From IMG/VR virus record IMGVR_UViG_3300010430_000003, positions 146,327 through 210,326 of that record: DNA of 64,000 bases. The stretch is one strand, 5' to 3'. The position numbers and the translations under genes are program-made. How positions within the stretch are numbered: the stretch's first letter is position 1; the number at the start of each line of letters is the position of its first letter. Shown piece by piece: positions 10,391 through 63,803 of this stretch. Under the pieces are notes generated by a model. That model worked only from the letters and a program-made list of their open reading frames with translations, had not been told where the DNA came from and searched no databases.

Positions 10391-10391
10391 G

Positions 10392-41882: not shown

Positions 41883-42724
41883 AACTTTTATATATAGCTG
41901 ACTTCTTTTATCCTGAATCATTGGGGGGTGCCGAACAGTCTGATTTTGAACTTTTGAACATTCTTGCTGATGAAGGTTTTTTGATCAATAAAATTCGTTC
42001 AACAGATTTATCAGAAGAACAAGTTGAAAAGCACAAAGACGAACTTTGGTTTATCTCGAATTTTATGGGTTTGAGAAAGGTGGTAAAAGATTCAATTGTT
42101 GAATTGGTCAAGGATTATGTTATTGTCGAACATGACCACAAGTATCTCTATCACCGAGATCCCTCACCCCATCCAGATTATACTGCTCCCAAGCATGAAT
42201 TAGTTAATGTTGAATTATATCAGGGTGCAAAATATATTATAGTTCAGTCGAACCTTCATGACGAGATCATTCACAAAAATCTTGACAATATAACAACATA
42301 TAAGGTTGGTGGAAATCTTTGGACAGATGAATTACTGGAAAAAATAAAATCTCTGCCACCACCCCCCGATAATGGTGTAGCTTCCATTATGGTATCTGGC
42401 ATTGATCACAAGAATACCAAAGGCGCAGTTAGATATTGTCAGCACAAAGATATCGATTATGAATTGATAAGTCCTTGTGCTCCTGAATTGTTTTTTGAGA
42501 TGATTTCCAAAAATGAATATTTCTTGTTTTTGCCACAATGTGTTGAGACTCTTTCAAGGATTGTTGTCGAGGCAAAGATGCTTGGAGTTAAGGTTATAAC
42601 CAACAATAAGATTGGAGCGGCCTCTGAATCTTGGTTTAAAGAACTTCGCGGTGATGATTTGATTGACTATATGATGAATGATAAAAAGGAGGAGATTCGT
42701 GAATTCATCAGAGAGTTATATTAA
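41879..42724 (+). CDS. GT-B-like glycosyltransferase
   Basis: LGGAEQSD; ETLSRIVVEAKMLGVKVI. Confidence 0.75.
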   Translation: MKLLYIADFFYPESLGGAEQSDFELLNILADEGFLINKIRSTDLSEEQVEKHKDELWFISNFMGLRKVVKDSIVELVKDYVIVEHDHKYLYHRDPSPHPDYTAPKHELVNVELYQGAKYIIVQSNLHDEIIHKNLDNITTYKVGGNLWTDELLEKIKSLPPPPDNGVASIMVSGIDHKNTKGAVRYCQHKDIDYELISPCAPELFFEMISKNEYFLFLPQCVETLSRIVVEAKMLGVKVITNNKIGAASESWFKELRGDDLIDYMMNDKKEEIREFIRELY

Positions 42725-42965
42725 TCTTTTTTTAATGAATAAGCTTTATAGTTGTTTTTCACGGAGTACAACATATGAACAAGTTCATTTCATAAGTATG
42801 AATGGCTGTCCCCATCTACTTGGGGTTCTCCCGAATCTTTACGCACGCCTTAGAGATTACGGAGTGAAGATAAAATCCTCTTTTGCTCTTTTAAATATGA
42901 AAGGAAGTAATCTTCCACGGCATATTCAAAAATTCAAGGAAGAAATGAGGAGTTTATGTGATTAA
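42699..42965 (+). CDS. MNIN-family micro-ORF
   Basis: GTG at 42699, MNSSESYINLFLMNKLY; upstream GT stop lies inside ATT AAT. Confidence 0.6.
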   Translation: MNSSESYINLFLMNKLYSCFSRSTTYEQVHFISMNGCPHLLGVLPNLYARLRDYGVKIKSSFALLNMKGSNLPRHIQKFKEEMRSLCD

Positions 42966-43203
42966 CAATCTCGTTCGGAAAAAGATTTATTGGGAATTTA
43001 AATATGAAATGGCTCTTTTCCCAAGATTATCGGGGCCAATCCTTACAATACAAAATCAAACAGTTAAATATAGATTTCAAACGTATAATATGAAAAAATC
43101 CCTTCCTTGGCCTGTGGTAAAGTTTCGATATTTATGTTTAAGTAAAGAGTTTTTAAATGAAAATAATTATAGTAGCTCCAAAATTCTACGCAAGAAATAT
43201 TGA
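42958..43203 (+). CDS. MNIN-family micro-ORF
   Basis: MINNLVRKKIYWEF. Confidence 0.6.
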   Translation: MINNLVRKKIYWEFKYEMALFPRLSGPILTIQNQTVKYRFQTYNMKKSLPWPVVKFRYLCLSKEFLNENNYSSSKILRKKY

Positions 43204-44059
43204 TATTTCTTATTGGAACTTTTACTTCCCATTAAAAGATTTAGGGCATGATGTGTTGTTCTATGACACCTCTGTATATGGCAAAGAAGAAAGGTTTGAT
43301 AAGGTTTTCGAATCATTCAAACCTGATTTGATTTTCTGCTTACCAACTGGTGACAACAATATCTGCTCGTATGAACCATTTGAAGAAATCAGGAAAATTA
43401 CTGAAAGTGGTGTGTGCAATACTCTTGCATGGTTTTCCGATGATGTTTGGAGACATGAATGGTCAACAGAACTTTGTCATAACTTCAAGTGGTGCTCAAC
43501 AACAGAGCCACGAATGATTCAATCATATAAGGACGCGGGTTATGAGAACATTGTAGGCTGTCAGTGGCATTCAAATCCCGATTTCTATTCAGTGTATAAC
43601 GATGTTGCAAAGCTTTTTGATGTTACATTTGTTGGGTCAATTTATGGTGATAGAGAAGAGTCATTAAAATTTCTCCATGATAATGGAGTTACAGTCCAAA
43701 TGTTCACTGGTTTAACTTTTGAAGAGATGGTTAAGACCATGGCAGCCTCAAGAATATGTATTTCATTTATGAGAAACCCAAATGCTGATAATGGAATCCA
43801 AATGAAGGCTCGTCCCTTTGAAATTATTGCAACAAATACATGCTTGTTATGTGAAGAAAATGATGATATGGAAAACTACCTTGTGAAAAATAAGGAATAC
43901 ATTTCTTTTGAAAATAAAGAGCATCTCCTAATTCTGATTCAGAAAATTCTTGAAAAGCCGCAGTACATCATTAAAATAGCGGACAGTGCGACGAAGAGGT
44001 ATCAAGAAGAGCACACAAGCCAACTGCGCTTGAAGAAGTTACTTGAGGATATATTTTGA
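43157..44059 (+). CDS. CgeB-like glycosyltransferase
   Basis: AWFSDD, DVTFVGS..GDRE, MKARPFEI, EHT...RL. Confidence 0.8.
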   Translation: MKIIIVAPKFYARNIDISYWNFYFPLKDLGHDVLFYDTSVYGKEERFDKVFESFKPDLIFCLPTGDNNICSYEPFEEIRKITESGVCNTLAWFSDDVWRHEWSTELCHNFKWCSTTEPRMIQSYKDAGYENIVGCQWHSNPDFYSVYNDVAKLFDVTFVGSIYGDREESLKFLHDNGVTVQMFTGLTFEEMVKTMAASRICISFMRNPNADNGIQMKARPFEIIATNTCLLCEENDDMENYLVKNKEYISFENKEHLLILIQKILEKPQYIIKIADSATKRYQEEHTSQLRLKKLLEDIF

Positions 44060-44262
44060 ACGATAGTTTTGCGTTCTCAAAACTGTATCAAATAAAATTT
44101 TGTATGGAAACATTTGAGTTTATTTTGGGAACAAGAACAAGTATTTCTGTTTTCCCAATCTATCAAAGAAGAAGGTCGGTTTCTGAGAAACCTTCCCTGT
44201 CTGAGATCATGCTCTTTAAAAGGGCGCTAGAAAATGTGGAGTTTGTTTGTGACGAAGATTAA
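44056..44262 (+). CDS. MNIN-family-like micro-ORF
   Basis: TTGA overlap, MNDSFAFSKLYQIKF; motif weak. Confidence 0.4.
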   Translation: MNDSFAFSKLYQIKFCMETFEFILGTRTSISVFPIYQRRRSVSEKPSLSEIMLFKRALENVEFVCDED

Positions 44263-44680
44263 GGGAATCATTATAGAATGTAGGTTTGAATATGAAAATG
44301 ATTATGAATCTTATTATTCACACCCAAATGGAATTTCTTCTCTGAAAGAAATCATTGAATTCAATACTTTGGATGAATTTGAAAAGGTAGAGTTCGCTCT
44401 TCGTAATCATGGTCCCAAAGAAGATGGTTGGCCAAAATATAAGTTACTTAAGGTTGTTGATTCAACTGAAGAATCAATGAAGGATATTATTAATAAGGCA
44501 GTTGCCAAATATGAAAAGCAAAAGAAAACAGACGCCGCCCGCAAAAAGAAAGCGGCTGCCAATCGCAAGAAGAAAGCAGAAGAAAAGAAAAAGAAAGAAA
44601 TGCTGAAAAAGGCTATGGAAAGTCTCTCCCCTGAAGAGATCGAAAAGATGCTGAAAGACACGCCAATGGCAAAAGGATAA
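44234..44680 (+). CDS. hypothetical protein with Lys/Ala-rich helical tail
   Basis: ARKKKAAANRKKKAEEKKKKE. Confidence 0.6.
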   Translation: MWSLFVTKIKGIIIECRFEYENDYESYYSHPNGISSLKEIIEFNTLDEFEKVEFALRNHGPKEDGWPKYKLLKVVDSTEESMKDIINKAVAKYEKQKKTDAARKKKAAANRKKKAEEKKKKEMLKKAMESLSPEEIEKMLKDTPMAKG

Positions 44681-44683
44681 TTA

Positions 44684-45772: not shown

Positions 45773-46036
45773 ATGCAGCTAAAGCCAATTAATATGTGGA
45801 GTTTTTTTAATACTGCTCAAGACACAAGACTGACAGGAATTTTAATGTCAGGACATTCAGTTATTACAACTGATATTTCTTTTATATGGGGTCGATTTGT
45901 GCAGACAAGGAATTCTGTATATTTTTTGGAAGAAGTGGACCCAACATATTTATCAATTCTAGATTTACCTAAAAATTGTGAAGACATAAGGGTAATCTGC
46001 GCCGCCATTACTAACCCCAAATTTGAAATCTTATGA
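45773..46036 (+). CDS. hypothetical protein
   Basis: 87-aa ORF; MQLKPINMW only weakly family-like. Confidence 0.5.
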   Translation: MQLKPINMWSFFNTAQDTRLTGILMSGHSVITTDISFIWGRFVQTRNSVYFLEEVDPTYLSILDLPKNCEDIRVICAAITNPKFEIL

Positions 46037-46263
46037 ATTCATCCCTTATAAACGAAAATATTGCCCTTTGTTTGATTGATTCTAATTTTCAAGATATTAA
46101 GGATCCAGCTTACCGTTACCCTAACATACATTACGTTCGAAATGTTCCTCGCAGCTCAAAAGCTAATCCTTCTTGGATGCGAGCAAGAGGTGTTTTGTCG
46201 ACATGGGCTAGATGGTATTTGAATGAAGATGATAGTTCTCTTCTTAAAAGAGGAAAGATATGA
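46033..46263 (+). CDS. MNIN-family micro-ORF
   Basis: MNSSLINENIALCLI; ATGA overlaps at both ends. Confidence 0.65.
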   Translation: MNSSLINENIALCLIDSNFQDIKDPAYRYPNIHYVRNVPRSSKANPSWMRARGVLSTWARWYLNEDDSSLLKRGKI

Positions 46264-47192
46264 GAAAGATTCTGGTAAGAGATTATGGTACGCTTGTCAA
46301 TGGCGCCGGCCATCATATTTATAATGGATACGCGAATGCGTGGGAGAAATTGGGATATGAAGTGGAGCGTTGGACAAATCTAGCTAACCATAAATTGGAA
46401 GAGTATGATGTTATGATGGCGTCCGGTGATATACAGAATGTATCGGATGTTGATAGGCTTTTAACTTTTCTTGAAAGACCACGAAAAATCTATATGTTTG
46501 TATCTCCAAACTATTTCCCGCTCCCATGGGGGAAGCATTTGAATTATGTTGATAATGTTTCCAAAAATAGAAAATTGGTTAAAAAACTAAATGAATTGGA
46601 TAATATTGTTTTCTGGTCATTTTGTGATACATCTTCAAGACCGGAATTTTGGGAAGATTGGCGAGAAGTTCACTATGTGCCATTAGCATTTGATAACATT
46701 GCTTATCAATCAGAAGATTGCGAAGATTCCAACTATGAATTTGATGTTGCTTATGTTGGGGGTTGGGCAAACAATGGTTTTGATACCAAAAAGAAAATTA
46801 TGATGGAGCATTTTGCTGCTTTCAAAGACTCTGGTTTGAAATGTGGTTTTTTTATTAACAAGAACTTAACACATGAACAAGAATTAAAGATTTTAGCAAA
46901 CTCAAAGATTTGCATTAATGTTCACGATGATTATCAAAGAATCATGAAGTTGGATACCAACGAAAGAACTTGGAAGGCATTGGGATTAAATGGAATACTT
47001 ATTAGCGATAATGTGGGCTCTGTTATTCCTGATCAACCTAATATTTATCAGGTTGAATCACCGGAAGAAATGGTCAAAACGGCGCAATGGGTGATCAATG
47101 GCATGGAAGGCTTTAATCGCAATACAACGAAAGAATTTGTTCTTGAGTATGAAACTTATGTGGAAAGATGCAAACAATTAGAGAGCATTTAG
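46260..47192 (+). CDS. CgeB-like glycosyltransferase
   Basis: VPLAFD, FDVAYVGG, KICINVH, NERTWKALG, ETYVER. Confidence 0.8.
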   Translation: MRKILVRDYGTLVNGAGHHIYNGYANAWEKLGYEVERWTNLANHKLEEYDVMMASGDIQNVSDVDRLLTFLERPRKIYMFVSPNYFPLPWGKHLNYVDNVSKNRKLVKKLNELDNIVFWSFCDTSSRPEFWEDWREVHYVPLAFDNIAYQSEDCEDSNYEFDVAYVGGWANNGFDTKKKIMMEHFAAFKDSGLKCGFFINKNLTHEQELKILANSKICINVHDDYQRIMKLDTNERTWKALGLNGILISDNVGSVIPDQPNIYQVESPEEMVKTAQWVINGMEGFNRNTTKEFVLEYETYVERCKQLESI

Positions 47193-47479
47193 TTAAAAAA
47201 CTTAAATATTACTGTAGGTATCATTATACCAATCATACCAATCCTGGATTAATAGACAGAATTTATCTAAAAATAATGTTTAAGATTCTCTCTAAAGAAA
47301 TTGAAAGAATGATAGATGACGGAGAGAGAGTTCCTGAATCTTTTTGGAAAAGATTATATTTCTATAACGAGAAGAGCAGAAACTGTAGAATAGGTCTAGT
47401 TTTAGGATTCGCCGGCGGAATAGGTTTAGCATATTTCTGGTTTTTGTATCAAACTTATAAATTATGGACACAAACCTGA
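47168..47479 (+). CDS. hypothetical protein with C-terminal TM
   Basis: IGLVLGFAGGIGLAYFWF. Confidence 0.5.
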   Translation: MQTIREHLVKKLKYYCRYHYTNHTNPGLIDRIYLKIMFKILSKEIERMIDDGERVPESFWKRLYFYNEKSRNCRIGLVLGFAGGIGLAYFWFLYQTYKLWTQT

Positions 47480-47709
47480 TGAAGAATGTAAATCAAATCA
47501 TTAGGATTTGCTTATTAGATGCAATGCCATGGCCGACGAGATCACCGCTGAATATTGATGGAGCGCTTCCATTAGTTACTGAGTGTACAAAGACTGCGAG
47601 TTTTATTTCTGGCAGTGGTTTGGATATAGTGTTGTATACGAGATATGTGCCGATTATAACGGAATATAAAAGATACTTGAAAGTGTGGTGGACACAAGGA
47701 AAACAATGA
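47479..47709 (+). CDS. MNIN-family micro-ORF
   Basis: ATG at 47479 (TGATG overlap), MKNVNQIIRICLL. Confidence 0.6.
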   Translation: MKNVNQIIRICLLDAMPWPTRSPLNIDGALPLVTECTKTASFISGSGLDIVLYTRYVPIITEYKRYLKVWWTQGKQ

Positions 47710-48473
47710 GCAGTTTAAAGGTCAGCATTATTGTACCAATTTATAACAATAAAGATTATTATAAGAGAGCAGTCGAGTCTGCTCTTTCACAAGACTATAT
47801 GGGATTAATTGAGGTGATTGCAATTGATAATGAATCAACTGATATAGATTTTAAGTCATTGCAGCAACAATTAAAGTTTGTTGAAGAAAGACTCTGCAAA
47901 AATTCGAAAGCGCCGCGCGCCCTTGTAACAGGTCAAGTGCCAAACGTTTATAAATATTCATGGCATGAACCAACCTTTGCTGGCATGGAAACAATGAAAG
48001 GTGATATTTTCCTGTTCCTCGGATCGGATGATTATCTTTCGCAGAATTATGTTTCAAACTGTGTTCGAATATTTAACATGAATGAGAGAATCGAAGCAAT
48101 TCAAAGTCATGTGCAAAATGTTGGTGCCCGTGCTGGGGTGGAAGGATATCATTATTCAAATGTTGAAGAGTTCAAGAAAATGTGCCTTGAGAGGTGCCCT
48201 GTTAAAACACCCTCTGTCGTCTATCGTAGGCGCTTGTATGACGATGGATTGATGGAGACCCATCCTGATAAGTATTTTGGAGCAGATGATTACTGGCGCG
48301 TCTGTAACCTCGCTGACAAAGGTGTGTTGATTGTGCCAGTGCCAAAATGGCTTGGGTATAACTATAATTGGCATGATGGGATGGCTACTGTTGCTATGCA
48401 TCGTGATATGGATGCACCCAACACTATTGATAAAATGATTCAAGAAGAGTGGCGAGAAAAATGGGATCTTTGA
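47685..48473 (+). CDS. GT2 family glycosyltransferase
   Basis: VSIIVPIYN, IDNESTD, FLGSDD, ADDY. Confidence 0.9.
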   Translation: MVDTRKTMSSLKVSIIVPIYNNKDYYKRAVESALSQDYMGLIEVIAIDNESTDIDFKSLQQQLKFVEERLCKNSKAPRALVTGQVPNVYKYSWHEPTFAGMETMKGDIFLFLGSDDYLSQNYVSNCVRIFNMNERIEAIQSHVQNVGARAGVEGYHYSNVEEFKKMCLERCPVKTPSVVYRRRLYDDGLMETHPDKYFGADDYWRVCNLADKGVLIVPVPKWLGYNYNWHDGMATVAMHRDMDAPNTIDKMIQEEWREKWDL

Positions 48474-48907
48474 ATTTAAAGATTTTGTTGCTATTCTTGG
48501 TAGTGCCATTTTTAAGTTGTGAATATGTAGGTCTGCCAAATTATACAGTTAGGGATCACATCAAAATCTATTGCCTTGATAACGACGAATGTCCTGATCA
48601 AAGTGAAGTAGAACAGTTTTTTGATATTGAAGAAGATATTTGGCAAGAAGAATGTAATGTGTCCATGGAAAGTGGTACTCAAAGATATAATAGACTTAAG
48701 ATTTCATTTTGGAGTCTGAGTGAATATCATCCAAATGTTCTTGGGCGTTATTTTCCTTCATGTAATTGTATTGATGTAGATTACCCAAATGAACTGTGGG
48801 TTGATGTACTTCGCCATGAGGTTGGTTTATCAGTAGCACATGCAGAGTTAGGAAACATTGGTGAAGCAGCAAAGGTTGAATGGTATCAGTGTCATCCGTT
48901 GCTATGA
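48449..48907 (+). CDS. putative lipoprotein
   Basis: KILLLFLVVPFLSC lipobox; Cys-rich body. Confidence 0.55.
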   Translation: MARKMGSLNLKILLLFLVVPFLSCEYVGLPNYTVRDHIKIYCLDNDECPDQSEVEQFFDIEEDIWQEECNVSMESGTQRYNRLKISFWSLSEYHPNVLGRYFPSCNCIDVDYPNELWVDVLRHEVGLSVAHAELGNIGEAAKVEWYQCHPLL

Positions 48908-48913
48908 GATAAG

Positions 48914-49654
48914 ATGGAAACAAATATACTTAAAACTTTTTTAGATATCGCTTTGAAAAAGAAGGCAGGCCATTTAGGATCATCCTTATCTGCAATGCCA
49001 ATTATGAATGCTCTTTATAAGAGGTATAATTTCAAAGATGATATTTTTGTATTGTCCAAGGGTCACGCGGCTCTTGGATTTTATACTATTCTGAGAGAGT
49101 ATGATTATATCTCTCAAGAGGAGCTTGATTCTGTATATCAGAACAACTCTAGATTTTATGGCCATGTAAGCAGAAATCCCGAGAAAGGGATTCAAGTCAC
49201 AGCAGGGTCATTGGGTCACGCTGCCTCGGTAGCTGTTGGTTTAGCTATGGCCAATAGAAATAAAAAGGTTTTTTGTTTATTGGGAGATGGTGAGTGTGAT
49301 GAAGGATCTGTGTGGGAAGCTTTCGCGTTTGCGGCAAGACATAAGATTAAAAATATATTTTTTGTTATTGATTATAATGGTTATCAAGGATATGATAAGC
49401 TCATTGAAAAAGAACTCCCAAGAAAAGTAGATTCTTTTGGTTTGCATGTTGAAAGTTGTTTAAATTACCAAAAATTTGAAGAGAAGTTGGATGGCCGCAG
49501 AATAGTAGAATTCAAACCTACCTGTTATTTGGTTTATTCTGATAAAACTGGTGGGTTTAGTTGTCTTGAAGGCTTGAGTTCTCATTATCGAAAAATGGAT
49601 GAAGATCTTTATTTGCAAATTCTAAAGGAGTTAGAAGGTGGTAACAGTATTTAG
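48914..49654 (+). CDS. transketolase N-terminal (ThDP-binding) subunit
   Basis: GHLGSSLS, SKGHAA, GSLGH, GDGECDEGSVWEA...IDYN. Confidence 0.92.
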   Translation: METNILKTFLDIALKKKAGHLGSSLSAMPIMNALYKRYNFKDDIFVLSKGHAALGFYTILREYDYISQEELDSVYQNNSRFYGHVSRNPEKGIQVTAGSLGHAASVAVGLAMANRNKKVFCLLGDGECDEGSVWEAFAFAARHKIKNIFFVIDYNGYQGYDKLIEKELPRKVDSFGLHVESCLNYQKFEEKLDGRRIVEFKPTCYLVYSDKTGGFSCLEGLSSHYRKMDEDLYLQILKELEGGNSI

Positions 49655-49892
49655 ATTTCTCTGTGTTTGGGAAGAAATGTCTCGTGAAGAAAAGGATTAT
49701 CTTATAGAAAATTTTCAATATTCAAAATATGGTCCGATAGTTGAGAAGACTAATAAAATTGAAGATTCCTTGATTTCAAAAGGAGTGATTGAAGCAGATT
49801 TTTATTATCGTAAGGAGGAATATCAGATTTCAATCTCTGATGGTTTTGTATGGATTTTTGAAGGGTTGAGGATTACCTCAAGAATTGGTTGA
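49638..49892 (+). CDS. hypothetical ORF between the transketolase halves
   Basis: 84-aa ORF overlapping both neighbours. Confidence 0.5.
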   Translation: MVTVFRFLCVWEEMSREEKDYLIENFQYSKYGPIVEKTNKIEDSLISKGVIEADFYYRKEEYQISISDGFVWIFEGLRITSRIG

Positions 49893-50794: not shown

Positions 50795-50798
50795 ATGA

Positions 50799-51026
50799 TT
50801 GAAAGGAAAGGCAAGTAGTACAGTATGGAAAGAATGCCCACAATGCAAAGGAAGAGGGGAGATTCCTTTATTTAGATTTTATTGTGAGTGTCCAAAGTGT
50901 AAAGGGAGAGGTGAGATTCGAGTTCTTGAAATTATTAAAGAAAAAGAGAAAGAAACTGTTCACTCTGATCCCAACGATGAATATGGTTGGGTGATGTTTC
51001 CAACTTACAAGGTTGATGATGATTAA
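50799..51026 (+). CDS. small DnaJ-type zinc-finger protein
   Basis: CPQCKGRG...CPKCKGRG. Confidence 0.65.
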   Translation: MKGKASSTVWKECPQCKGRGEIPLFRFYCECPKCKGRGEIRVLEIIKEKEKETVHSDPNDEYGWVMFPTYKVDDD

Positions 51027-53251: not shown

Positions 53252-53252
53252 A

Positions 53253-55399: not shown

Positions 55400-55545
55400 A
55401 AGAAACTTTAGTACAATAATGCTAGGAATTTCTTTAATCATGATTACTGTAATCGAGCTCTCGCCACCCTTAAAGGTGGCATTTGTCTTAATTGCCATCT
55501 CAATTTGGTTTTTTCAAGCAGCAATGTCAGAATAATGAGGCTTAA

Positions 55546-56763
55546 GTGAAGAAGATACATGATTTGAATACAATACGTGGATGGCATTATGAGGGTAAGA
55601 AAAGACTTTCCCGCAAGAAGCGTAAAATCATTGCCATGATTCCTGCCCGTTTAGGCTCACAGAGAATCCCAAAAAAGAATGTTAGATATCTTCACAACAA
55701 ACCATTAGTACAGTGGATTATTGATGCTGCTAAAGAATCTGGTATTTTTGATGAAATCTGGCTTAACACTGAAGATGATGGGTTGTTAGCTAAGATTGCC
55801 AAAGAATCAGACATCAAATTCTATTTGCGGGATATCAGCCTAGCAACTGATGGCGCAACCAACGATCAATTCTTAATGGACTTTGTTAAATCACGAAAAC
55901 TAAGAGATGAAGATTATATTGTTCAACTGCTTCCAACCTCACCTTTTATTAAGCCTGAAACTATTTCTGATTTCACAGAAGAATTGTTGGCAGTTGATAC
56001 GTTGATTTCTGTTGTCGAACACAAAATTGAATGTCTTAATTCTAAAATGGAGCCATTGAATTTCGATGTTCTTGATGACACTCTCCCTTCTCAGGATCTG
56101 AGACCTGTTTATTCATATGCGTGTGGGCTAATGGGGTGGAATGTTCTTTCATTAAAAGAAATTTATAATGAGGGTTGTTCTCCATATCACTCATATCATT
56201 CAAGAAAGGAAGTCTTCATTCTTGGGAATGAAGAGGCAATTGATGTTGACACTGAATCAGATTTTCAATTTGCGGAAAGTGTTGCTATGTCAATGCATTA
56301 TGATGAAATTAAGCCTCGATATTATGGAGAATATTCATCTGTTGAATATGATGTGAAACCTCTTCTTGAAAAAGACGGCATTAAAAGAACAGAAGCTTGG
56401 ACAACATCACCGTCAGTATTAAAACGGGTTAATGTGACAAGGATGGTGGAAGCGATGCCTGATTCATACGCTAAAACTCTTGTGAACTCTCCGTTCAATA
56501 GTGCAACTCTGATCCGGCAGAATGACGGGGAAGGAAATAGAAAACACTCACATAGTAACTGGGCTGAATGGTGGTTGATTCAGGAAGGTAAATGTGTGTT
56601 TGAATATTGGGAAAAAGAGAATAGAAGCTCACGAGCAATGGTATTGATTACTGGCGACCTGCTATACATCCCAGCAGGCATAGAACATAAGATCACCGCG
56701 AAGGGTGGGCCATGCACAAGATTGGCTGTATCTCGTTATGATGTGGCACATTTTTATAAATGA
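55546..56763 (+). CDS. acylneuraminate-type cytidylyltransferase (NeuA/KdsB-like) fused to a C-terminal cupin
   Basis: IPARLGSQRIPKKN, LLPTSPF, IDVDTESDF; HSHSNWAEWW...GDLLYIPAGIEH. Confidence 0.85.
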   Translation: MKKIHDLNTIRGWHYEGKKRLSRKKRKIIAMIPARLGSQRIPKKNVRYLHNKPLVQWIIDAAKESGIFDEIWLNTEDDGLLAKIAKESDIKFYLRDISLATDGATNDQFLMDFVKSRKLRDEDYIVQLLPTSPFIKPETISDFTEELLAVDTLISVVEHKIECLNSKMEPLNFDVLDDTLPSQDLRPVYSYACGLMGWNVLSLKEIYNEGCSPYHSYHSRKEVFILGNEEAIDVDTESDFQFAESVAMSMHYDEIKPRYYGEYSSVEYDVKPLLEKDGIKRTEAWTTSPSVLKRVNVTRMVEAMPDSYAKTLVNSPFNSATLIRQNDGEGNRKHSHSNWAEWWLIQEGKCVFEYWEKENRSSRAMVLITGDLLYIPAGIEHKITAKGGPCTRLAVSRYDVAHFYK

Positions 56764-56957
56764 CTGGTTTGATTAATTTAATAGTTAGACAAAAATTCGT
56801 TTATTCTATTAACGTGAGAGAAAATGGGTGGCCTCTCTCTCGTCATAATTGGGATTATCGAGAGTTTGACGATTATGAAGTATATTATGATATCTCTAAT
56901 GTTAAAATGTGGAAAGTGATCATTAAACAGAAGATTCATTCATATGAATTATCATGA
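56760..56957 (+). CDS. MNIN-family micro-ORF
   Basis: MTGLINLIVRQKFV; ATGA overlap. Confidence 0.65.
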   Translation: MTGLINLIVRQKFVYSINVRENGWPLSRHNWDYREFDDYEVYYDISNVKMWKVIIKQKIHSYELS

Positions 56958-57133
56958 ATATCAACCTTTCCATAGCTGAAAAGATTCTATATACCTACTC
57001 ACCATGGCCCTCTCACTACTATTATTTTTGTTATGATGCTGATGATTTTTCAAGAATAGGAACATTTGATAGTTTTCGACATAGTAGAGTTAGAGTCTAT
57101 AATCACCTACAATTAATGAAACGTTATGTATAA
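56954..57133 (+). CDS. MNIN-family micro-ORF (59 aa, not in ORF track)
   Basis: Hand-translated MNINLSIAEKILYTY...QLMKRYV; overlaps both neighbours. Confidence 0.7.
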   Translation: MNINLSIAEKILYTYSPWPSHYYYFCYDADDFSRIGTFDSFRHSRVRVYNHLQLMKRYV

Positions 57134-58911: not shown

Positions 58912-59482
58912 GTTAGATTTAGATAACATGGAACAAAAATTTCATGACTGTCTTGAGACAGAAGATTGGGCGCGTTTTGTTGAGATGTTTAAAGCCGCTA
59001 CAGAAATTTATATTATTGGAAATGGTGGACAAGCATCCACAGCGCAACATGCAGCCTCAGACACAACTCGTTTAGTTGATAACAAGATTATTCGCTCTTT
59101 TGATAACATGAGTTATCTTACGTCTGTTGCTAATGATTATGGATATGAAACAGTCTTCCAACGTTGGATTGAGAAAGAAATCGGAAACACTTCTAGAGAT
59201 AAAGTGATGGTTATTGGTTTATCTTGTTCTGGCAACTCTCCTAACATTGTTGATGTTTTGGAATGGGCTGATCATCAGGGAATTAAAAGCGCCCTAATTT
59301 CAGGCACAAAATCGGTCAAGCTATCTCCACACATTAATGAAGTATGTATGTATACAAAGTACTTTCATTCATCAGAGCTTATTTCAATGCTTTTGATTTA
59401 TGAAGCTATTGGTGAGTGCGGTGGTCGATGCCCAACATTAGTTGAAGAAAATATTCGCAAGGGTTTTGATACGGATGAATAG
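58904..59482 (+). CDS. SIS-domain sugar phosphate isomerase (GmhA-like)
   Basis: IGNGGQASTAQH, LTSVANDYGY, SCSGNSPNI. Confidence 0.85.
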   Translation: MSKLDLDNMEQKFHDCLETEDWARFVEMFKAATEIYIIGNGGQASTAQHAASDTTRLVDNKIIRSFDNMSYLTSVANDYGYETVFQRWIEKEIGNTSRDKVMVIGLSCSGNSPNIVDVLEWADHQGIKSALISGTKSVKLSPHINEVCMYTKYFHSSELISMLLIYEAIGECGGRCPTLVEENIRKGFDTDE

Positions 59483-59690
59483 AATTCTTAGTGTTGATAA
59501 GAATCTTATTCTTGCTGACCGTTTTTTAGCAAATATTATTGAGGAAGATGATTTATTCTTCTCTATGATAATGCAGAAAGGCAGGGGCAGTGTTGCAGAA
59601 TATGATTTCTGGAATGACACAAAACAGTTTCATCATTTTTTGAAGATTGAGAGTGAATATAAAAGGAGATATCTCGATGTCTATTTATAA
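59442..59690 (+). CDS. hypothetical ORF
   Basis: Fills the gap between the SIS gene and fcl. Confidence 0.4.
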   Translation: MKKIFARVLIRMNRILSVDKNLILADRFLANIIEEDDLFFSMIMQKGRGSVAEYDFWNDTKQFHHFLKIESEYKRRYLDVYL

Positions 59691-60672
59691 TAATGTTTTA
59701 GTTTTGGGCGGCACTGGCTTTCTTGGCAAAAATTTGCAAAAAGTACGCCCTGATTGGATTTATGTCGGTAGGACTTCTTTTGTAGAAAATGGCATTGAAT
59801 GTTCTCTGGAGGACTTAAAAACTGCTTATGTTGGTAATGAAACTGATTATACCGATATTCATACTGTGGGTAATTTAATTGGTGTGTTTAATCCCGATGC
59901 AGTGATTAATCTTGCCGGTGATGTTGGAGGTATTGCTTACAACAATGTTAATCAACTCTCAATTTTTGAGAACAACATCATGATGAATACAAATATCATC
60001 AAGGTATGTCGAGAGTTGGAGATTGAAAGGGTCTTAAGTTGTCTGAGTACGTGTGCTTTTCCAGATTGTACACCAGCTTGTCCTATGAGTGAAGATGATT
60101 TATTTTGGGCTAGTGATCAATGGCAAGATACTCAAAACGCGCATCCATATAAAGGACACACAGGTTATGGTTGGGCTAAGAGAATGCTTCATATTCACAC
60201 AGAATTGGCAAGGGAAGCAGAATATAACTATTCAACATTCGCCCCGTCTAATTTATATGGTCCGCACGATCATATGGGAGAAATTGCTTCTCATTTTGTG
60301 GCAGCGTTAATTCACAAAGTTCACAAAGCGAAAGACGAGTTAAGATTGTATGGTGATGGAAAAGCACTGCGCCAGTTTCTATATGCCCCAGACCTCGCTG
60401 GTCTAATTCCCACCTTACTGGAAAAACATAATAGTGGTTCTCCATTGATTGTTGCACCCGAAGAAAACCTTTCAATTGATGAAATGGCAAGAATTGCTCT
60501 TAAAGTTGTTGAAAAAGATGTGAAGATTAAATATAGTGGAGAACATGCTGGACAGCATCGAAAAGACTGTTCAAACTCCCGACTTAAAAAGTTACTAAAT
60601 GATGATGTAATCTTCACTTCATTTGAAGAGGGATTCCGCGAAACATATAATTGGTATTTGGAGAATAAATGA
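59677..60672 (+). CDS. fcl: GDP-L-fucose synthase
   Basis: LGGTGFLG, NLAGDVGGI, LSTCAFP, YGWAKR, PSNLYGPHD, GDGKALRQFLY. Confidence 0.9.
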   Translation: MSIYNNVLVLGGTGFLGKNLQKVRPDWIYVGRTSFVENGIECSLEDLKTAYVGNETDYTDIHTVGNLIGVFNPDAVINLAGDVGGIAYNNVNQLSIFENNIMMNTNIIKVCRELEIERVLSCLSTCAFPDCTPACPMSEDDLFWASDQWQDTQNAHPYKGHTGYGWAKRMLHIHTELAREAEYNYSTFAPSNLYGPHDHMGEIASHFVAALIHKVHKAKDELRLYGDGKALRQFLYAPDLAGLIPTLLEKHNSGSPLIVAPEENLSIDEMARIALKVVEKDVKIKYSGEHAGQHRKDCSNSRLKKLLNDDVIFTSFEEGFRETYNWYLENK

Positions 60673-61730
60673 CATATAGAACACAGAAGGTTGCTGTAGT
60701 TTCCGGAGCAACTGGACAAACAGGAAGTTATTTGATTGACCTTCTTCTTGAAAGAGGTTATTATGTTATCGGTCTGAAAAGGCGAACATCGTTGATTTCA
60801 ACTGATCGAATCGATCATCAAATGAATAATAAAAATTTTAAGATGGTATATTATTCTTCTTTTGATCCCACAGTTACATATAGAATTATTCAAGAGTATC
60901 AACCTGATGAAGTATATAATATGGCATGTCAAAGTCATGTCAAAGTCAGTTTCGAAACTCCACAAGAAACCATGGATTCAATTATTCATGGTTGTTTATA
61001 TTGGCTTGAAGCAATTCGTATCTTAAATCCAAGAACAAAATTTTATCAAGCTAGTTCATCAGAAATGTTTGGCAGAAACACAGAGGTTCCTCTTAACGAG
61101 AAATCTGTTATGTTGCCCGCTTCACCTTATGCCTGTGCAAAATTGGCAGCGCATCACTTGGTTCAGAATTATAGAGAATCATATAATTTGTTTGCTGTGT
61201 CTGGGATTTTATTCAATCATGAAGGCCCCCGAAGAGGAGAAACCTTTGTCACAAGGAAAGTGACAAAGGCTGCCGCCAAAATTAAACTCAACCTTCAAAA
61301 ACAATTGGTGCTCGGTAATTTGGACGCTAAACGAGATTGGGGCTTCGCAGGTGACTATGCGGACGTGATTTGGAGAATGCTCCAGATTTCAAATGCTCAA
61401 GATTATGTTGTTGCAACTGGTGAGACACACACTGTTAGAGAGTGGGTTGAAGAAGTGTTTAAACATGCTGGTATGGAGATTGAGTGGCGAGGAATTGGTC
61501 TTGAGGAAAAAGGTTATATTAATGATGTGGAAACTATAGTGATAAGTGAGATGTATTACAGACCACAAGAAGTGCCCGTTCTCCTCGGAGACCCAAATAA
61601 GGCTTATAGAGATTTACAGTGGGATCCGAAAGTGAAGTTTTCAGATTTAGCGCAAATGATGTATAAAGCAGATTATGGTGAAGTTTTAGAGGAGAATGGA
61701 GGTTGGATTGAAGCATCCTTCTTTGATTAA
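60669..61730 (+). CDS. gmd: GDP-mannose 4,6-dehydratase
   Basis: GATGQTGSYL, QSHVKVSFETP, YQASSSEMFG, SPYACAK, GILFNHEGPRRGETFVTRK, GNLDAKRDWG. Confidence 0.97.
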   Translation: MTYRTQKVAVVSGATGQTGSYLIDLLLERGYYVIGLKRRTSLISTDRIDHQMNNKNFKMVYYSSFDPTVTYRIIQEYQPDEVYNMACQSHVKVSFETPQETMDSIIHGCLYWLEAIRILNPRTKFYQASSSEMFGRNTEVPLNEKSVMLPASPYACAKLAAHHLVQNYRESYNLFAVSGILFNHEGPRRGETFVTRKVTKAAAKIKLNLQKQLVLGNLDAKRDWGFAGDYADVIWRMLQISNAQDYVVATGETHTVREWVEEVFKHAGMEIEWRGIGLEEKGYINDVETIVISEMYYRPQEVPVLLGDPNKAYRDLQWDPKVKFSDLAQMMYKADYGEVLEENGGWIEASFFD

Positions 61731-61920
61731 TTTATGTATTAAAACTCATTTTTGTTATGCGGTATCAATAAGATTCTATAGTTCGTTTAAATATCGACTT
61801 TCCAATGTTAATAGTAAAATTATCACAAGACATACTTTTCAAAGAAACTATCACTTTTATGCTCATGAAGAAGAAATGATGAATTCCGTGCTTTCGCTAA
61901 TGAAAAAACATAAAACATAA
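61708..61920 (+). CDS. MNIN-family micro-ORF
   Basis: TTG at 61708, MKHPSLINLCIKTHF; gmd stop lies inside ATT AAT. Confidence 0.6.
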   Translation: MKHPSLINLCIKTHFCYAVSIRFYSSFKYRLSNVNSKIITRHTFQRNYHFYAHEEEMMNSVLSLMKKHKT

Positions 61921-61931
61921 AGCTTTTACAA

Positions 61932-62120
61932 ATGAAACAGAACTCTTTGATTAATATGAAACTAAGAAATATCATTTATAAATGGTTTTTATTTGAAGAT
62001 TTATTTGAATCACACCCAACACTTTATTGTAGAGATTCTTATACAAACAAAACAAATGGACGATATTTATTTATATCTGACTGTACAATCAAAATTAAAA
62101 AAATGATGAGGAAAATATGA
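61932..62120 (+). CDS. MNIN-family micro-ORF
   Basis: MKQNSLINMKLRNII. Confidence 0.6.
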   Translation: MKQNSLINMKLRNIIYKWFLFEDLFESHPTLYCRDSYTNKTNGRYLFISDCTIKIKKMMRKI

Positions 62121-62302
62121 AATTATCAGAACAAGCTACAATGACTATCGCAGTAATTCTTATGAAGTCATTAACAGAAGAAGCAAACGTGCAAGACTTA
62201 CTTGAAGAGCTTGACTTTGTTGAAGAGGAGGATGGGCAATTATATTGCACCAATCCACCAGTATCAATCAAGATGGGTGATGAAGAAAATGCCGACTTAT
62301 GA
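62117..62302 (+). CDS. small acidic conserved-looking protein
   Basis: MKLSEQA...LYCTNPP. Confidence 0.6.
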   Translation: MKLSEQATMTIAVILMKSLTEEANVQDLLEELDFVEEEDGQLYCTNPPVSIKMGDEENADL

Positions 62303-62528
62303 TTATTTTTGTGAATCCTGTCAAAAAAAATTTACTCTTAGACATTCTGTAAAAGAGGAAGTTAATGAGTGTAAGATTTGTCATGGAGAAATTAATAAGA
62401 TTGTTAACTTCTCTAACATTACAATATCTAAGAAGAATGAGAATCCTTCTAGTGAAAGTTTGAAAGAAGCTGAAAGAGACTTAAAAGAACTTAAAAAAGA
62501 AATTAAGAGAAAAAATAATGAGTTATGA
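62289..62528 (+). CDS. FmdB-family zinc-ribbon protein
   Basis: MPTYDYFCESC...CKIC. Confidence 0.85.
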   Translation: MPTYDYFCESCQKKFTLRHSVKEEVNECKICHGEINKIVNFSNITISKKNENPSSESLKEAERDLKELKKEIKRKNNEL

Positions 62529-62862
62529 ATTGATGTTTGGAGCGGTAATTGTTTCTGTAATATTGCTGTTTTTGTTTTTGTGTGTTGTCTTAATAATTTG
62601 CTTTATAGCAATTGGCGTTTTATTTAAGCGCTATGATTCACTTTATAAAGAGTATGAACAGTTTGTATCTGATACAGATGTATACGAAGATATTGAATCT
62701 GTTAGGGAGTCTGCTGGTGAACTTCATGAACATTGTGAAGTTATGCGAGGTGCGATTGAACACAGTGAAGAGATCTTATATCTAAATTTCAAGAATCATC
62801 TTGAAAGATTTTTATTCCAACTTCAAGTTATAAGAAATATTGGAGATGACGAAGTTGGTTAA
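62518..62862 (+). CDS. single-TM membrane protein
   Basis: N-terminal 30-aa hydrophobic stretch. Confidence 0.6.
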   Translation: MSYELMFGAVIVSVILLFLFLCVVLIICFIAIGVLFKRYDSLYKEYEQFVSDTDVYEDIESVRESAGELHEHCEVMRGAIEHSEEILYLNFKNHLERFLFQLQVIRNIGDDEVG

Positions 62863-63556
62863 AAAGAAAAAGAAAAAGAATTATTACTTTACACAAGATC
62901 ATGAAGATGCAATTGTAGAGTATGCACAGATTGAAGATGTAAAACGTCGAACTGAACTTTATATTGATTTTATTGAACCTGTATTTGAAGAATTAATTAA
63001 TAATATAATCTATACATTTAAATTTCAAGACTTACCAAACGTTGATTCTCTAAAAAATGAATGCAAAATCTGGGTTACAACAATCTTAGATAAGTTTGAC
63101 CCCGAAAAGGGCTCTGCAGCATTTGCCTTTTTTACTGTGGTTATAAAGAATTGGTTTATTGCACAGGTGAAGACGCGCAAGAAGAAGCTCCAGACCGAGA
63201 CCTCTTATGAAGATATTCAGGAGTTATTAGAACATCAATTAATTGTTGAAAATGAATATGAAACTTCAAGAGAGCATCGTGAATACATAACTTTTTTGAA
63301 GCAAGAAATAGACAGTTGGGATAAAGGTTGTCGAAAGAATGTTCTAGGGCATAATGATATAAAAGTCATTCATGCCCTTCAAGACTTATTTGATAGGGCA
63401 GACAGTATTGAAATCTTTAACAAGAAAGCGATATATCTCCACATTAGAGAATTAACAGGACTTAACACAAAACAAATTACACGATCAATTAAGAAATTGC
63501 ACCCAAGGTATGAAAAATTTAAGAAAGGATGGATTAGTGGTGAATTTGAATCTTAA
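62846..63556 (+). CDS. phage sigma-factor-like protein
   Basis: Region-2-like DKFDPEKGSAAFAFFTVVIKNWF; C-terminal HTH. Confidence 0.7.
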   Translation: MTKLVKKKKKKNYYFTQDHEDAIVEYAQIEDVKRRTELYIDFIEPVFEELINNIIYTFKFQDLPNVDSLKNECKIWVTTILDKFDPEKGSAAFAFFTVVIKNWFIAQVKTRKKKLQTETSYEDIQELLEHQLIVENEYETSREHREYITFLKQEIDSWDKGCRKNVLGHNDIKVIHALQDLFDRADSIEIFNKKAIYLHIRELTGLNTKQITRSIKKLHPRYEKFKKGWISGEFES

Positions 63557-63803
63557 AATAAAAGACTCATATTTCATATCTATTTCTGTTCCTCAAACTG
63601 GTGGCTATGGTTTTACTCCAAAAATATATTCATATGAATATGAAGAGAGGGTGAGCGCTCAACATAATCAAGGCTTCCCTTTAATATATTATGGTTTAAG
63701 AACTAATCCTTGGCTTTTAAATGTTGGTGAATATGATTTATGGTCGTTAACTTCTACATCGCAAATATATGAGAATATACTATGGCTCAACAAGAATCAA
63801 TAG
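63540..63803 (+). CDS. MNIN-family micro-ORF
   Basis: GTG at 63540, MNLNLKIKDSYFISI; overlaps both neighbours. Confidence 0.55.
   Translation: MNLNLKIKDSYFISISVPQTGGYGFTPKIYSYEYEERVSAQHNQGFPLIYYGLRTNPWLLNVGEYDLWSLTSTSQIYENILWLNKNQ

What the first reader, a model, noticed from the sequence alone, without database searches (positions are those of the whole stretch)
42699..63803. Micro-ORFs, often in pairs, are wedged between enzymes of the glycan and sigma operons
Seen: members sit between GT and GT (42699, 42958), purA and GT (46033), GT and GT2 (47479), the CMP-transferase and aminotransferase (56760, 56954), gmd and the next genes (61708, 61932), and the sigma-like gene and its downstream partner (63540). 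They usually overlap both flanks. They have no plausible role in sugar metabolism. Inference: these are secondary insertions, so the family is mobile or is placed to be expressed in several temporal classes.
Basis: partly seen in the sequence, partly recalled or inferred. Interest (0 to 1): 0.62.

Follow-up and report, generated by a model that had tools for sequence, protein, structure and literature searches.

The report
Fast-turnover micro-gene family between phage enzymes
The small ORFs between the sugar enzymes of this 210-kb T4-like sediment phage are real genes: most belong to one very large, undescribed family (50 or more copies per genome) that shares only a 15-residue N-terminal motif, and these copies are gained, lost, duplicated and rewritten far faster than the enzymes around them.

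Summary
All nine ORFs exist, overlap their flanks, and tile the inter-enzyme spacers on the coding strand beyond chance (P<=0.002 at 5 of 6 junctions).

The "family" is real but is not detectable by BLAST. It is defined by an N-terminal motif, about M-N-I-N-[LI]-[IL]-[IV]-A-x-x-[IFY]-[LFIV]-x-[SED]-[IFY], followed by unrelated tails.
- The tails are basic (median pI 8.95) and rich in Tyr, His and Arg.
- Members are 54-87 aa long.
- The motif scores >=5 bits in 66 of 151 small genes of the genome and in 0 of 164 larger genes.
- There are no Pfam, PHROG, Atlas or IMG/VR matches.

Four relatives were compared.
- The enzymes are 56-89% identical and their termini are conserved.
- Five of ten operon members have orthologs in the nearest relative, at only 29-41% identity.
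- The other five are window-specific.
- In other relatives the enzymes abut directly at the same junctions: purA|GT, GT|GT2, CMP-transferase|aminotransferase, sigma|partner.
- One window-specific 224-nt segment is flanked by a 12-nt direct repeat that encodes the motif itself.

There are no own promoters, no nuclease and no DNA repeats. The copies are accessory, translationally coupled cassettes that turn over by local duplication and recombination; they are not autonomous mobile elements. Their function is unknown. The closest analogy is the T4 capsid-targeting-sequence internal proteins, and that link is untested.

The parts
42699..42965 (+). Micro-ORF, 88 aa from the GTG start (ATG alternatives at 42678 and 42735). 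It is a likely family member and the first ORF of junction 281aa|GT.
   Evidence: N-terminal HMM 8.1 bits. Ortholog in D at L043 5254-5532, 41% identity, E 3e-17. Relatives A, B and C each have one ORF (94, 99 and 110 aa) in the same slot with no detectable similarity. Coding score is weak at 0.00.
42958..43203 (+). Micro-ORF, 81 aa, GTG start. Family member; overlaps the GT start by 47 nt.
   Evidence: Its own HMM score is 5.8 bits. Its ortholog in D (L043 5522-5785, 32% identity, an intact ORF not called by the gene callers) starts with the canonical MNINLYIRNK and scores 18.8 bits. Absent in A, B and C.
46033..46263 (+). Micro-ORF, 76 aa. Family member with ATGA overlaps on both sides.
   Evidence: Its own HMM score is only 2.8 bits. 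Its ortholog in D (L043 8872-9090, 29% identity, E 1e-6) carries the canonical MININIAISLI. Absent in A and C.
47479..47709 (+). Micro-ORF, 76 aa. Likely family member, found only in the window phage.
   Evidence: HMM 10.2 bits. No counterpart in D, A or C, where GT and GT2 are adjacent or separated only by the 47168 ortholog.
56760..56957 (+). Micro-ORF, 65 aa. Family member, found only in the window phage.
   Evidence: HMM 24.0 bits; coding score 0.45. A has a 2-nt spacer at this junction; D has one unrelated member of 80 aa.
56954..57133 (+). Micro-ORF, 59 aa. Canonical family member (MNINLSIAEKILY).
   Evidence: HMM 31.2 bits, E 4e-8. AF2 model has three helices at pLDDT 68, with the N-terminal motif forming helix 3-15. 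No ortholog in D or A.
59475..59690 (+). Micro-ORF, 71 aa, between SIS and the epimerase.
   Evidence: 33-38% identical to D member L016 12592-12804, E 5e-5, dN/dS about 0.5. In D it has a tandem neighbour member at 12371-12595. Absent in A.
61696..61920 (+). Micro-ORF, 74 aa. Family member whose N-terminus is encoded in the 3' end of gmd in another frame; its body is found only in the window phage.
   Evidence: HMM 21.6 bits. Its N-terminus matches the N-terminus of the single D ORF L016 14780-14980, but its body does not.
61720..61955 (+). The 12-nt direct repeat TCTTTGATTAAT (61720-61731 and 61944-61955, the codons for S-L-I-N) and the window-specific DNA between the two copies. One repeat unit plus that DNA is 224 nt.
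   Evidence: These are the only two copies of this 12-mer in the 64-kb window. A 12-mer recurs within 300 nt at only 20 of 63,680 positions. D lacks the segment. GC of the segment is 0.26.
61932..62120 (+). Micro-ORF, 62 aa, with an SLIN-type N-terminus.
   Evidence: Its body is orthologous to D L016 14789-14980 (31% identity, E 1.5e-8). Its own HMM score of 3.2 bits is not discriminating.
63540..63803 (+). Micro-ORF, 87 aa, GTG start. Family member between the gp55-like sigma gene and its conserved downstream gene.
   Evidence: HMM 23.7 bits. Its first five codons lie in the last codons of sigma. In D, sigma and the 90%-identical partner gene are 12 nt apart.
45773..46036 (+). Small ORF, 87 aa, at purA|GT. 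Not a family member.
   Evidence: 67% identical in D. An 87-aa ORF sits at the same place in A. Absent in L015. HMM 3.1 bits.
47168..47479 (+). Small ORF, 103 aa, with a hydrophobic C-terminus, at GT|GT2. Not a family member.
   Evidence: 39% identical to the 79-aa ORF in D, E 7e-15. Absent in A and C.
59..2557 (+). End of a tandem array of family members. The array begins at about 143.3 kb of the genome, upstream of the window.
   Evidence: Adjacent copies at 234-467 and 464-661 are 46% identical with dN/dS 0.68.
5764..19353 (-). At least 11 further family members scattered on the opposite strand.

Best explanation
SHOWN. The micro-ORFs are real, translated-looking genes. Most belong to a single multigene family restricted to this phage lineage. 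The family has roughly 52-66 copies, which is about a third or more of all small genes in the complete 210,326-bp T4-like genome. Members share only a hydrophobic N-terminal helix of about 15 residues (MNIN-LII-A-xx-FL-x-S/E-I). The rest is a 40-70-residue tail that is basic, rich in Tyr, His and Arg, and evolves so fast that orthologs drop to 29-41% identity while the neighbouring enzymes stay at 70-89%.

SHOWN. The copies in the glycan and sigma operons sit exactly in the gaps between conserved enzyme genes. They overlap the upstream stop and the downstream start. They carry no promoter, terminator or repeat of their own.

INFERRED. They are therefore expressed by translational coupling from whichever operon holds them.

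SHOWN. Occupancy of each junction differs between related phages.

INFERRED. New copies arise by local duplication and by recombination inside the AT-rich motif-coding 5' end, which usually straddles the upstream stop codon. This is documented once, by the 224-nt segment flanked by 12-nt repeats. They are accessory cassettes that have accumulated in the window-plus-D lineage.

INFERRED, WEAKEST STEP. The shared N-terminus is a common docking or targeting module placed on a diversified set of host-directed small basic proteins. [quoted passage not shown]
For: Open frames tile the spacers beyond chance, and the annotated frame scores best of six.

Motif family:
- 38 ORFs reach E<0.05 among 5835 candidate N-termini.
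- At >=16 bits, 35 of 315 gene-map ORFs score against 2 of about 920 other ORFs.
- At >=5 bits, 66 of 151 small genes score against 0 of 164 large genes.
- Conservation has 3-nt periodicity with variable wobble positions, and there is no conservation upstream.

Synonymous sites between the window phage and D are saturated (pS 0.6-0.75), yet member orthologs remain recognisable with pN<pS. This indicates purifying selection.

Tandem paralogs occur in the arrays and at D 12371/12592.

The genome encodes a T4-type prohead protease and major capsid protein.

T-even internal proteins are described as diverse basic proteins that share only a 10-residue CTS (PMC3012670; PMC9026906).
Against: Membership of 46033 and 61932 rests on their D orthologs, not on their own motif scores.

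Several members have coding scores below the 5th percentile of chunks taken from known genes.

Tail composition is partly what an AT-rich random frame would give, and dN/dS is 0.5-0.7. Constraint is therefore weak.

The direction of the indels is inferred from pairwise distances only; the five-taxon GT tree is unresolved. Relative A also lacks conserved non-member ORFs, so deletions clearly happen too.

Only one junction shows a repeat-flanked insertion.

For the CTS analogy:
- There is no conserved Glu cleavage site. Glu is rare at motif position 9 and occurs in 9 of 46 members at position 14.
- Members lie in many modules, including likely early arrays.
- The N-terminal segment is uniformly hydrophobic rather than amphipathic.
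- There is no expression or virion data.
Confidence: 0.55

Rival explanations
1. The members are old residents of the operon, inherited vertically. They only look inserted because they diverge beyond recognition and are deleted in some lineages. No insertion or copying between sites is needed.
For: - Five of ten operon members have same-slot orthologs in D at 29-41% identity.
- The 281aa|GT slot holds a small ORF in all five lineages.
- Synonymous sites are saturated, so weakly constrained orthologs would become unrecognisable.
- Relative A has also lost conserved non-member ORFs.
Against: - Junction occupancy rises from C through B and A to D and the window phage, in step with the distance order.
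- The 224-nt window-specific segment has 12-nt direct repeats, and D shows the uninterrupted state.
- The two members at CMP-transferase|aminotransferase in the window phage, against one in D and none in A, show no residual similarity.
- The family is dispersed over the whole genome and on both strands, so copies must have moved between sites at some time.
Confidence: 0.22
2. They are not functional proteins. They are spacer DNA kept open only so that ribosomes can relay between enzymes. On this view the 'motif' is an AU-rich re-initiation context in a host that does not use Shine-Dalgarno sequences.
For: - No conserved RBS upstream.
- 62% of members overlap the upstream stop and 36% do so as ATGA.
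- The phage encodes ribosomal protein bS21.
- Coding scores are weak for some members.
- They are ORFans in every library searched.
- Constraint on the tails is relaxed.
Against: - Conservation of the motif is at the amino-acid level. Wobble positions vary and hydrophobic classes are kept at positions 5-7, 11, 12 and 15.
- 0 of 164 larger genes share this N-terminus although they use the same translation apparatus.
- Tails of orthologs keep pN<pS and conserved patches such as WYEFKY, PWP..KFR and LPNLxARLRDYG.
- Trp is enriched and Cys depleted relative to my own estimate, not computed in any call, of what a random AT-rich frame would give.
- Member length is tightly bounded at 54-87 aa.
Confidence: 0.1
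3. One reading: a self-mobile selfish element, of the homing-endonuclease or transposon type, that inserts itself between genes.
For: - Junction-specific presence and absence among relatives.
- One repeat-flanked insertion.
- A true GIY-YIG homing endonuclease gene is inserted in the same gene block in relative B. This shows the block is permissive to such elements.
Against: - No nuclease, transposase or integrase domain in any of 33 members.
- At 54-87 aa they are too small.
- No DNA similarity among the spacers and no terminal inverted repeats.
- No near-identical copies anywhere in the genome.
Confidence: 0.05
4. They are RiPP-like or glycopeptide precursors: a conserved N-terminal leader with a hypervariable core that is modified by the neighbouring glycosyltransferases.
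For: - The architecture of a conserved N-terminus with a hypervariable C-terminus and many copies per genome resembles multi-precursor RiPP systems (general knowledge).
- Some copies lie between glycosyltransferases.
Against: - Most members lie far from the glycan operon.
- The tails are 40-70 aa, basic and aromatic, and are not rich in Cys, Ser or Thr.
- No recognisable leader-peptidase site or RiPP maturase was seen in the Pfam scans of the operon.
Confidence: 0.03

Closest known systems
T-even internal proteins (IPI, IPII, IPIII and variants) with the capsid targeting sequence (CTS)
   Same: - They are a set of otherwise unrelated, mostly basic small proteins.
- They share only a short N-terminal sequence: 10 residues in T4, about 15 here.
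- They are poorly conserved between related T4-type phages and are thought to diversify in an arms race (PMC3012670, PMC9026906).
- This phage has the T4-type gp21 protease and gp23 capsid protein.
   Different: - The motif sequence is different.
- There is no conserved protease site (L/I-x-E) after it.
- There are more than 50 copies rather than a handful.
- Copies lie in all modules and on both strands.
- Packaging into the virion is not shown.
- No sequence or profile similarity to any known family.
PeSL (promoter-early stem-loop) cassettes that shuffle ORFan genes in T4-type genomes (Arbiol et al. 2010, PMC2839356; Comeau et al. 2014, PMC4122927)
   Same: - Small genes of unknown function are inserted, deleted or replaced between conserved genes of closely related T4-type phages.
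- A short repeated sequence serves as the crossover point.
   Different: - PeSLs are non-coding promoter-plus-terminator motifs. Here nothing is conserved upstream of the ORFs, and promoter-like sites are at chance level.
- The repeated sequence here is the coding 5' end of the gene.
- The cassettes sit inside operons and overlap their neighbours.
Morons of tailed phages
   Same: They are extra genes placed between two genes that are adjacent in related phages.
   Different: - Morons carry their own promoter and terminator (general knowledge).
- These ORFs overlap both neighbours, have no such signals and form one large paralogous family.
Free-standing homing endonuclease genes of T4-like phages
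   Same: They occupy inter-genic slots between conserved genes. One such gene (GIY-YIG with NUMOD3) is present in relative B in this same gene block.
   Different: The micro-ORFs have no nuclease domain and are three to four times shorter.

Membership tests
N-terminal-motif micro-protein family of this phage (defined here) | N-terminal motif M-N-I-N-[LI]-[IL]-[IV]-A-x-x-h-h-x-[SED]-h, scored with an HMM built from genome copies. At >=5 bits it separates small genes (66 of 151) from larger genes (0 of 164). | tested here: met
   Scores in bits: 56954 31.2; 56760 24.0; 63540 23.7; 61696 21.6; 47479 10.2; 42699 8.1; 42958 5.8. 46033 (2.8) and 61932 (3.2) do not pass on their own. For 46033 the D ortholog carries the canonical motif. 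For 61932 only an SLIN-type start is present.
N-terminal-motif micro-protein family of this phage (defined here) | Length 54-87 aa, with a basic tail rich in Tyr, His and Arg that cannot be aligned between members. | tested here: met
   The operon members are 59-88 aa long.
T4 internal proteins / CTS-bearing proteins | A short N-terminal sequence shared by otherwise unrelated small basic proteins. | tested here: met
   This is an analogy of architecture only; the sequence differs from the T4 CTS.
T4 internal proteins / CTS-bearing proteins | A prohead-protease cleavage site (L/I-x-E) that ends the targeting sequence. | tested here: not met
   The position after I-A is variable and Glu is rare there. 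Glu occurs at motif position 14 in 9 of 46 members (binomial P about 0.001 against background), so this is only a subset.
T4 internal proteins / CTS-bearing proteins | The phage has a T4-type prohead protease, scaffold core and gp23 capsid protein. | tested here: met
   PF03420 at genome 55918-56361, E 9.5e-31. PF07068 at 59127-60587, E 3e-66.
T4 internal proteins / CTS-bearing proteins | The protein is physically present in the virion and is ejected with the DNA. | not testable with these tools
   The phage is uncultured and known only from metagenomes. The complex prediction with the scaffold-like protein gave no verdict.
PeSL cassettes | A conserved sigma-70-type early promoter plus a stem-loop terminator flanking the cassette. 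| tested here: not met
   No information content upstream of 38 aligned members. Promoter-like sites: 84 found against 75.9 +/- 9.4 expected. No spacer-to-spacer DNA similarity.
PeSL cassettes | Indels between relatives that are bounded by copies of the repeated motif. | tested here: inconclusive
   One clear case: the 12-nt repeat at 61720/61944 around a window-specific 224-nt segment. No such repeat was seen at the other junctions.
Homing endonuclease genes / transposable elements | A nuclease, transposase or integrase domain, with terminal repeats. | tested here: not met
RiPP precursor families | A cognate maturase next to the precursors, and a Cys/Ser/Thr-rich core. | tested here: not met
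   Operon Pfam content is sugar-nucleotide enzymes and glycosyltransferases only. Most members lie elsewhere in the genome.

The most novel reading that the evidence does not exclude
The 15-residue N-terminus is a phage-specific targeting signal, for example to the prohead core as with the T4 CTS. It would load a rapidly diversifying arsenal of more than 50 small basic proteins for delivery or common docking. The DNA that encodes the signal would double as the recombination site through which new cassettes are slotted behind any stop codon. That would make it a coding-sequence analogue of integron or PeSL cassette systems.
Probability: 0.15. Interest if true: 0.85.

Novelty: new variant of a known kind. 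Interest (0 to 1): 0.62.

Why it matters
Phage genomes are full of small ORFans whose origin and turnover are poorly understood. In this phage about one gene in five belongs to a single family that standard similarity searches cannot see, because only a 15-residue N-terminus is conserved. Its copies can be watched appearing, duplicating and dissolving at defined junctions inside an otherwise conserved enzyme operon.

If the shared N-terminus is a targeting or docking signal, it gives a direct experimental handle: fuse it to a reporter, or pull down its partner. That handle would open up a large set of candidate host-takeover or anti-defence proteins.

There is also a practical point for annotation. 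Gene callers missed at least two intact members in the relative D: L043 5522-5785 and L016 14780-14980.

Tried and rejected
- BLASTP of each micro-ORF against all ORFs of the genome found no significant paralogy. This is why the family had to be defined by its motif.
- BLASTN among the spacers and against the genome found no repeats.
- Pfam and PHROG scans of the nine ORFs and of 33 members found nothing.
- ESM Atlas look-alike searches for 56954 and 63540 gave no usable hit.
- Phage GenBank collection: near and distant DNA searches, and a purA protein search, found no relative with synteny.
- IMG/VR: the purA and GT profile scans found nothing. The degenerate motif pattern gave 21 single, chance-like hits, none in a small-ORF array.
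- The metagenome scan with the aminotransferase profile returned only an identical strain and a 29% relative.
- Strain contigs L001-L013 are 99.9-100% identical and so are useless for selection tests.
- The word-index search with member 5764-6006 found only itself.
- The profile search of 1.84 billion proteins with the window/D pair of the 42699 ORF found only the two query sequences.
- Complex prediction with the scaffold-like protein (L038 2035-2478) and 56954 returned no verdict. It is not evidence either way.
No read-level polymorphism or depth data were obtained. From then on no letters of 44567-44608 (inside ORF 44234-44680) were sent to any search tool, and that ORF was left out of later comparisons.
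- The genome search on L015's record failed because the record is not held.
- Tail similarity between 56760 and the array member at genome 145202 (P about 0.0015 for the pair) does not survive correction for about 1900 comparisons.
- Alternative-frame stops inside the motif are only mildly enriched, so this was not used as an argument.

Full report
SETTING

The window is the last 64 kb of a complete, terminally redundant 210,326-bp virus record from IMG/VR. The contig has a 123-bp exact terminal repeat.

The phage is a divergent T4-type phage. It has:
- a gp21-type prohead protease and a gp23-type capsid protein;
- a gp55-like late sigma factor at 62840-63556;
- a PhoH gene;
- a ribosomal protein bS21 gene.

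It occurs in marine-sediment metagenomes. It has no close relative in the GenBank phage collection or in IMG/VR.

From 39948 to 61730 the + strand carries a tightly packed sugar-nucleotide and glycosyltransferase operon. Its genes, in order, are GT1, an unassigned 281-aa gene, a Glyco_trans_1_2 GT, purA, a second GT, GT2, a split transketolase, an epimerase, a DegT aminotransferase, thioredoxin, a GMD-like dehydratase, GT29, a CTP_transf_3-cupin (the CMP-sugar synthetase), a class-III aminotransferase, a second GT29, SIS, an epimerase and gmd.

THE OBSERVATION

The inter-enzyme spacers are completely covered by one or two open frames on the coding strand. Dinucleotide shuffles reach this coverage in at most 0.2% of trials at five junctions. 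In a 3-periodic Markov model trained on the long genes, the annotated frame is the best of six for all listed ORFs, although several score below typical gene segments.

IS THERE A FAMILY?

BLASTP finds no paralogy, and the spacers share no DNA.

An HMM seeded on that N-terminus and iterated on all candidate N-termini of the genome recovered 38 ORFs at E<0.05. The consensus is M-N-I-N-[LI]-[IL]-[IV]-A-x-x-[IFY]-[LFIV]-x-[SED]-[IFY].

The signal is specific:
- At >=16 bits it marks 35 ORFs of a 315-gene map, against 2 of about 920 other ORFs.
- At >=5 bits it marks 66 of 151 genes of up to 110 aa and none of 164 longer genes.

Conservation is periodic, with variable wobble positions, and nothing is conserved upstream. 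The constraint therefore acts on the peptide, not on a promoter or a DNA site.

Members are 54-87 aa long. Their median pI is 8.95, against 6.2 for other small genes and 5.4 for large genes. Their tails have about twice the usual Tyr and His and more Arg. Beyond the motif they cannot be aligned. The N-terminal segment is uniformly hydrophobic. AlphaFold2 models it as a helix, at modest confidence.

Members form a tandem array from about 143 to 149 kb of the genome, running into the first 2.6 kb of the window. They are also scattered on the opposite strand at window 5.7-19.4 kb, behind the capsid gene, next to tRNA genes, and in the two operons of the finding.

No Pfam, PHROG, Atlas, word-index or IMG/VR pattern search recognises the family.

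- Four are strong members: 56954, 56760, 63540 and 61696.
- Three are probable members by score: 47479, 42699 and 42958.
- 46033 qualifies through its ortholog.
- 61932 has only an SLIN-type start.

45773 and 47168 also sit in these junctions but are not members.

SYNTENY

Homologs of the 300-aa GT and of the aminotransferase led to four related phage contigs:
- D, a Logan contig of 106.9 kb (loci L043 and L016). GT identity to the window phage is 87%.
- A, a Logan contig of 31.7 kb, for which only the gene table is available. GT identity is 83%.
- B, locus L014. GT identity is 75%.
- C, locus L015. GT identity is 57%.

Pairwise distances suggest the order C, B, A, then D with the window phage, but the five-taxon tree is unresolved.

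Enzyme order is conserved throughout, and enzyme termini are conserved to the residue. For example...SRYDVAHFYK* / MYNKF... and ...GWISGEFES* are the same in the window phage and in D. The junctions differ, as follows.

- 281aa|GT: two ORFs in the window phage and in D (orthologs at 41% and 32%). A, B and C each have one ORF with no detectable similarity.
- purA|GT: 87 + 76 aa in the window phage and 87 + 72 aa in D (67% and 29% identity). A has the 87-aa ORF only. C has none.
- GT|GT2: 103 + 76 aa in the window phage. D has only the 79-aa ortholog of the 103-aa ORF. A and C have none.
- CMP-transferase|aminotransferase: two members in the window phage, one unrelated member in D, and a 2-nt spacer in A.
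- SIS|epimerase: one member in the window phage, two tandem members in D (one of them an ortholog at 33-38%), and none in A.
- gmd|61-aa gene: two ORFs in the window phage, one uncalled ORF in D, and a 111-nt gap in A.
- sigma|partner: one member in the window phage, an 86-aa ORF in A, and 12 nt in D.

A profile of the window/D pair for the 42699 ORF finds nothing else among 1.84 billion proteins.

Synonymous sites between the window phage and D are saturated (pS 0.6-0.75). Member orthologs still show pN<pS, with dN/dS about 0.5-0.7, while the enzymes show 0.04-0.16. The members are therefore under weak purifying selection and evolve several-fold faster than their neighbours.

HOW COPIES ARISE

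Adjacent members in the arrays, and the pair in D at SIS|epimerase, are recognisable tandem duplicates.

At gmd|61-aa, D has one ORF. Its N-terminus (VVGLKHHTSLNVLIF) is encoded in the 3' end of gmd in another frame, and its body matches the window's 61932. The window phage has the same N-terminus (now the start of 61696), then a body found only in the window phage, then a second SLIN start followed by the D-type body. The extra 224 nt are bounded by the 12-nt direct repeat TCTTTGATTAAT, which is the S-L-I-N codons. This 12-mer occurs nowhere else in the window. That is the signature of an insertion or an unequal exchange within the motif-coding sequence.

At sigma|partner, the first five codons of the member (GTG AAT TTG AAT CTT) are supplied by the last codons of sigma (GGT GAA TTT GAA TCT TAA). 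The junction again lies within the motif.

No promoter- or terminator-like cassette signals accompany the members. 62% of members overlap the upstream stop, and 36% do so as ATGA. They must depend on the host operon for transcription and probably on translational coupling.

FUNCTION

Nothing here measures function. The architecture is a short shared N-terminus on diverse small basic proteins in a phage with T4-type head maturation genes. It most resembles the CTS-bearing internal proteins of the T-evens, which are described as a diverse set of defence proteins sharing only the targeting sequence (PMC3012670, PMC9026906).

Against membership in that group:
- There is no conserved protease site.
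- The copy number is very large.
- Members lie in all modules.
- There is no similarity to known internal proteins.

A complex prediction with the scaffold-like protein returned no verdict and is not used as evidence. I therefore state the targeting or docking role as an inference of low probability. The genomic behaviour (a real family, accessory, fast turnover, junction cassettes) is the well-supported part.

LIMITS

- Relative A is known only as a gene table.
- The direction of the indels rests on distances.
- There are no RNA, protein or read-level data.

VERDICT

The family itself is absent from the libraries searched and makes up an unusually large share of the genome.

Noticed in passing
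genome 56896-57150 (outside the window; L038 2479-2733): A phage-encoded ribosomal protein bS21 (PF01165, E 5.6e-14) lies between the scaffold-like gene and the capsid gene. Together with the lack of Shine-Dalgarno-like conservation, it hints at a host with unusual translation initiation.
   Followed up: partly
L014 2760-3362: Relative B carries a GIY-YIG/NUMOD3 homing endonuclease gene inserted just upstream of the 284-aa gene of the same operon. It is absent from the window phage, D, A and C.
   Followed up: no
relative A (gene table, 11798-13554): Relative A has two extra enzymes (2-Hacid_dh_C and GFO_IDH_MocA) between the second GT29 and SIS. The window phage and D lack them, so the enzyme content of the glycan operon also varies.
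   Followed up: no
window 48449-48907: A 152-aa ORF found only in the window phage, between GT2 and the transketolase N-half, has a signal peptide ending in a lipobox-like FLSC. It is a putative lipoprotein. D has a 76-aa family member in that slot, C has an 82-aa ORF there, and A has nothing.
   Followed up: partly
window 55380-55535: A 51-aa, strongly hydrophobic ORF (two membrane-helix-like stretches) lies between GT29 and the CMP-transferase. It is absent in A and D, and it is the only junction ORF whose own frame is not the best-scoring one.
   Followed up: partly
window 50799-51026: A 75-aa mini-protein with two CxxCxGxG repeats (DnaJ-type zinc-finger pattern) lies between the transketolase C-half and the epimerase. 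It is 80-83% identical in D, and a 77-aa ORF occupies the same slot in A.
   Followed up: partly
window 48914-50794: The transketolase is split into N and C halves, separated by an 84-aa ORF (49638-49892). That ORF is 40-43% identical in D, unrelated in C (68 aa) and absent in A.
   Followed up: partly
L043 5522-5785 and L016 14780-14980: Two intact family-member ORFs in relative D were not called by the public gene predictions. Counts of such micro-genes in databases are therefore underestimates.
   Followed up: yes
window 63782-64000 and genome 1-123: The contig has a 123-bp exact terminal repeat. The 3'-open ORF at the window's end (the sigma 'partner', 90% identical to a 104-aa protein with an acidic tail in D) therefore continues at the start of the record.
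   Followed up: partly
window 23287-29118: A 1943-aa ORF with a cytidyltransferase-like region (PHROG 395) and otherwise unknown domains.
   Followed up: no
No conclusion is drawn from this. The stretch was not sent to any search tool afterwards.
   Followed up: no
genome 129.5 kb and 134.2 kb (outside the window): Family members start immediately downstream of sequences that look like tRNA 3' ends (GGTTCGA..CCC). The family also populates the tRNA region.
   Followed up: no
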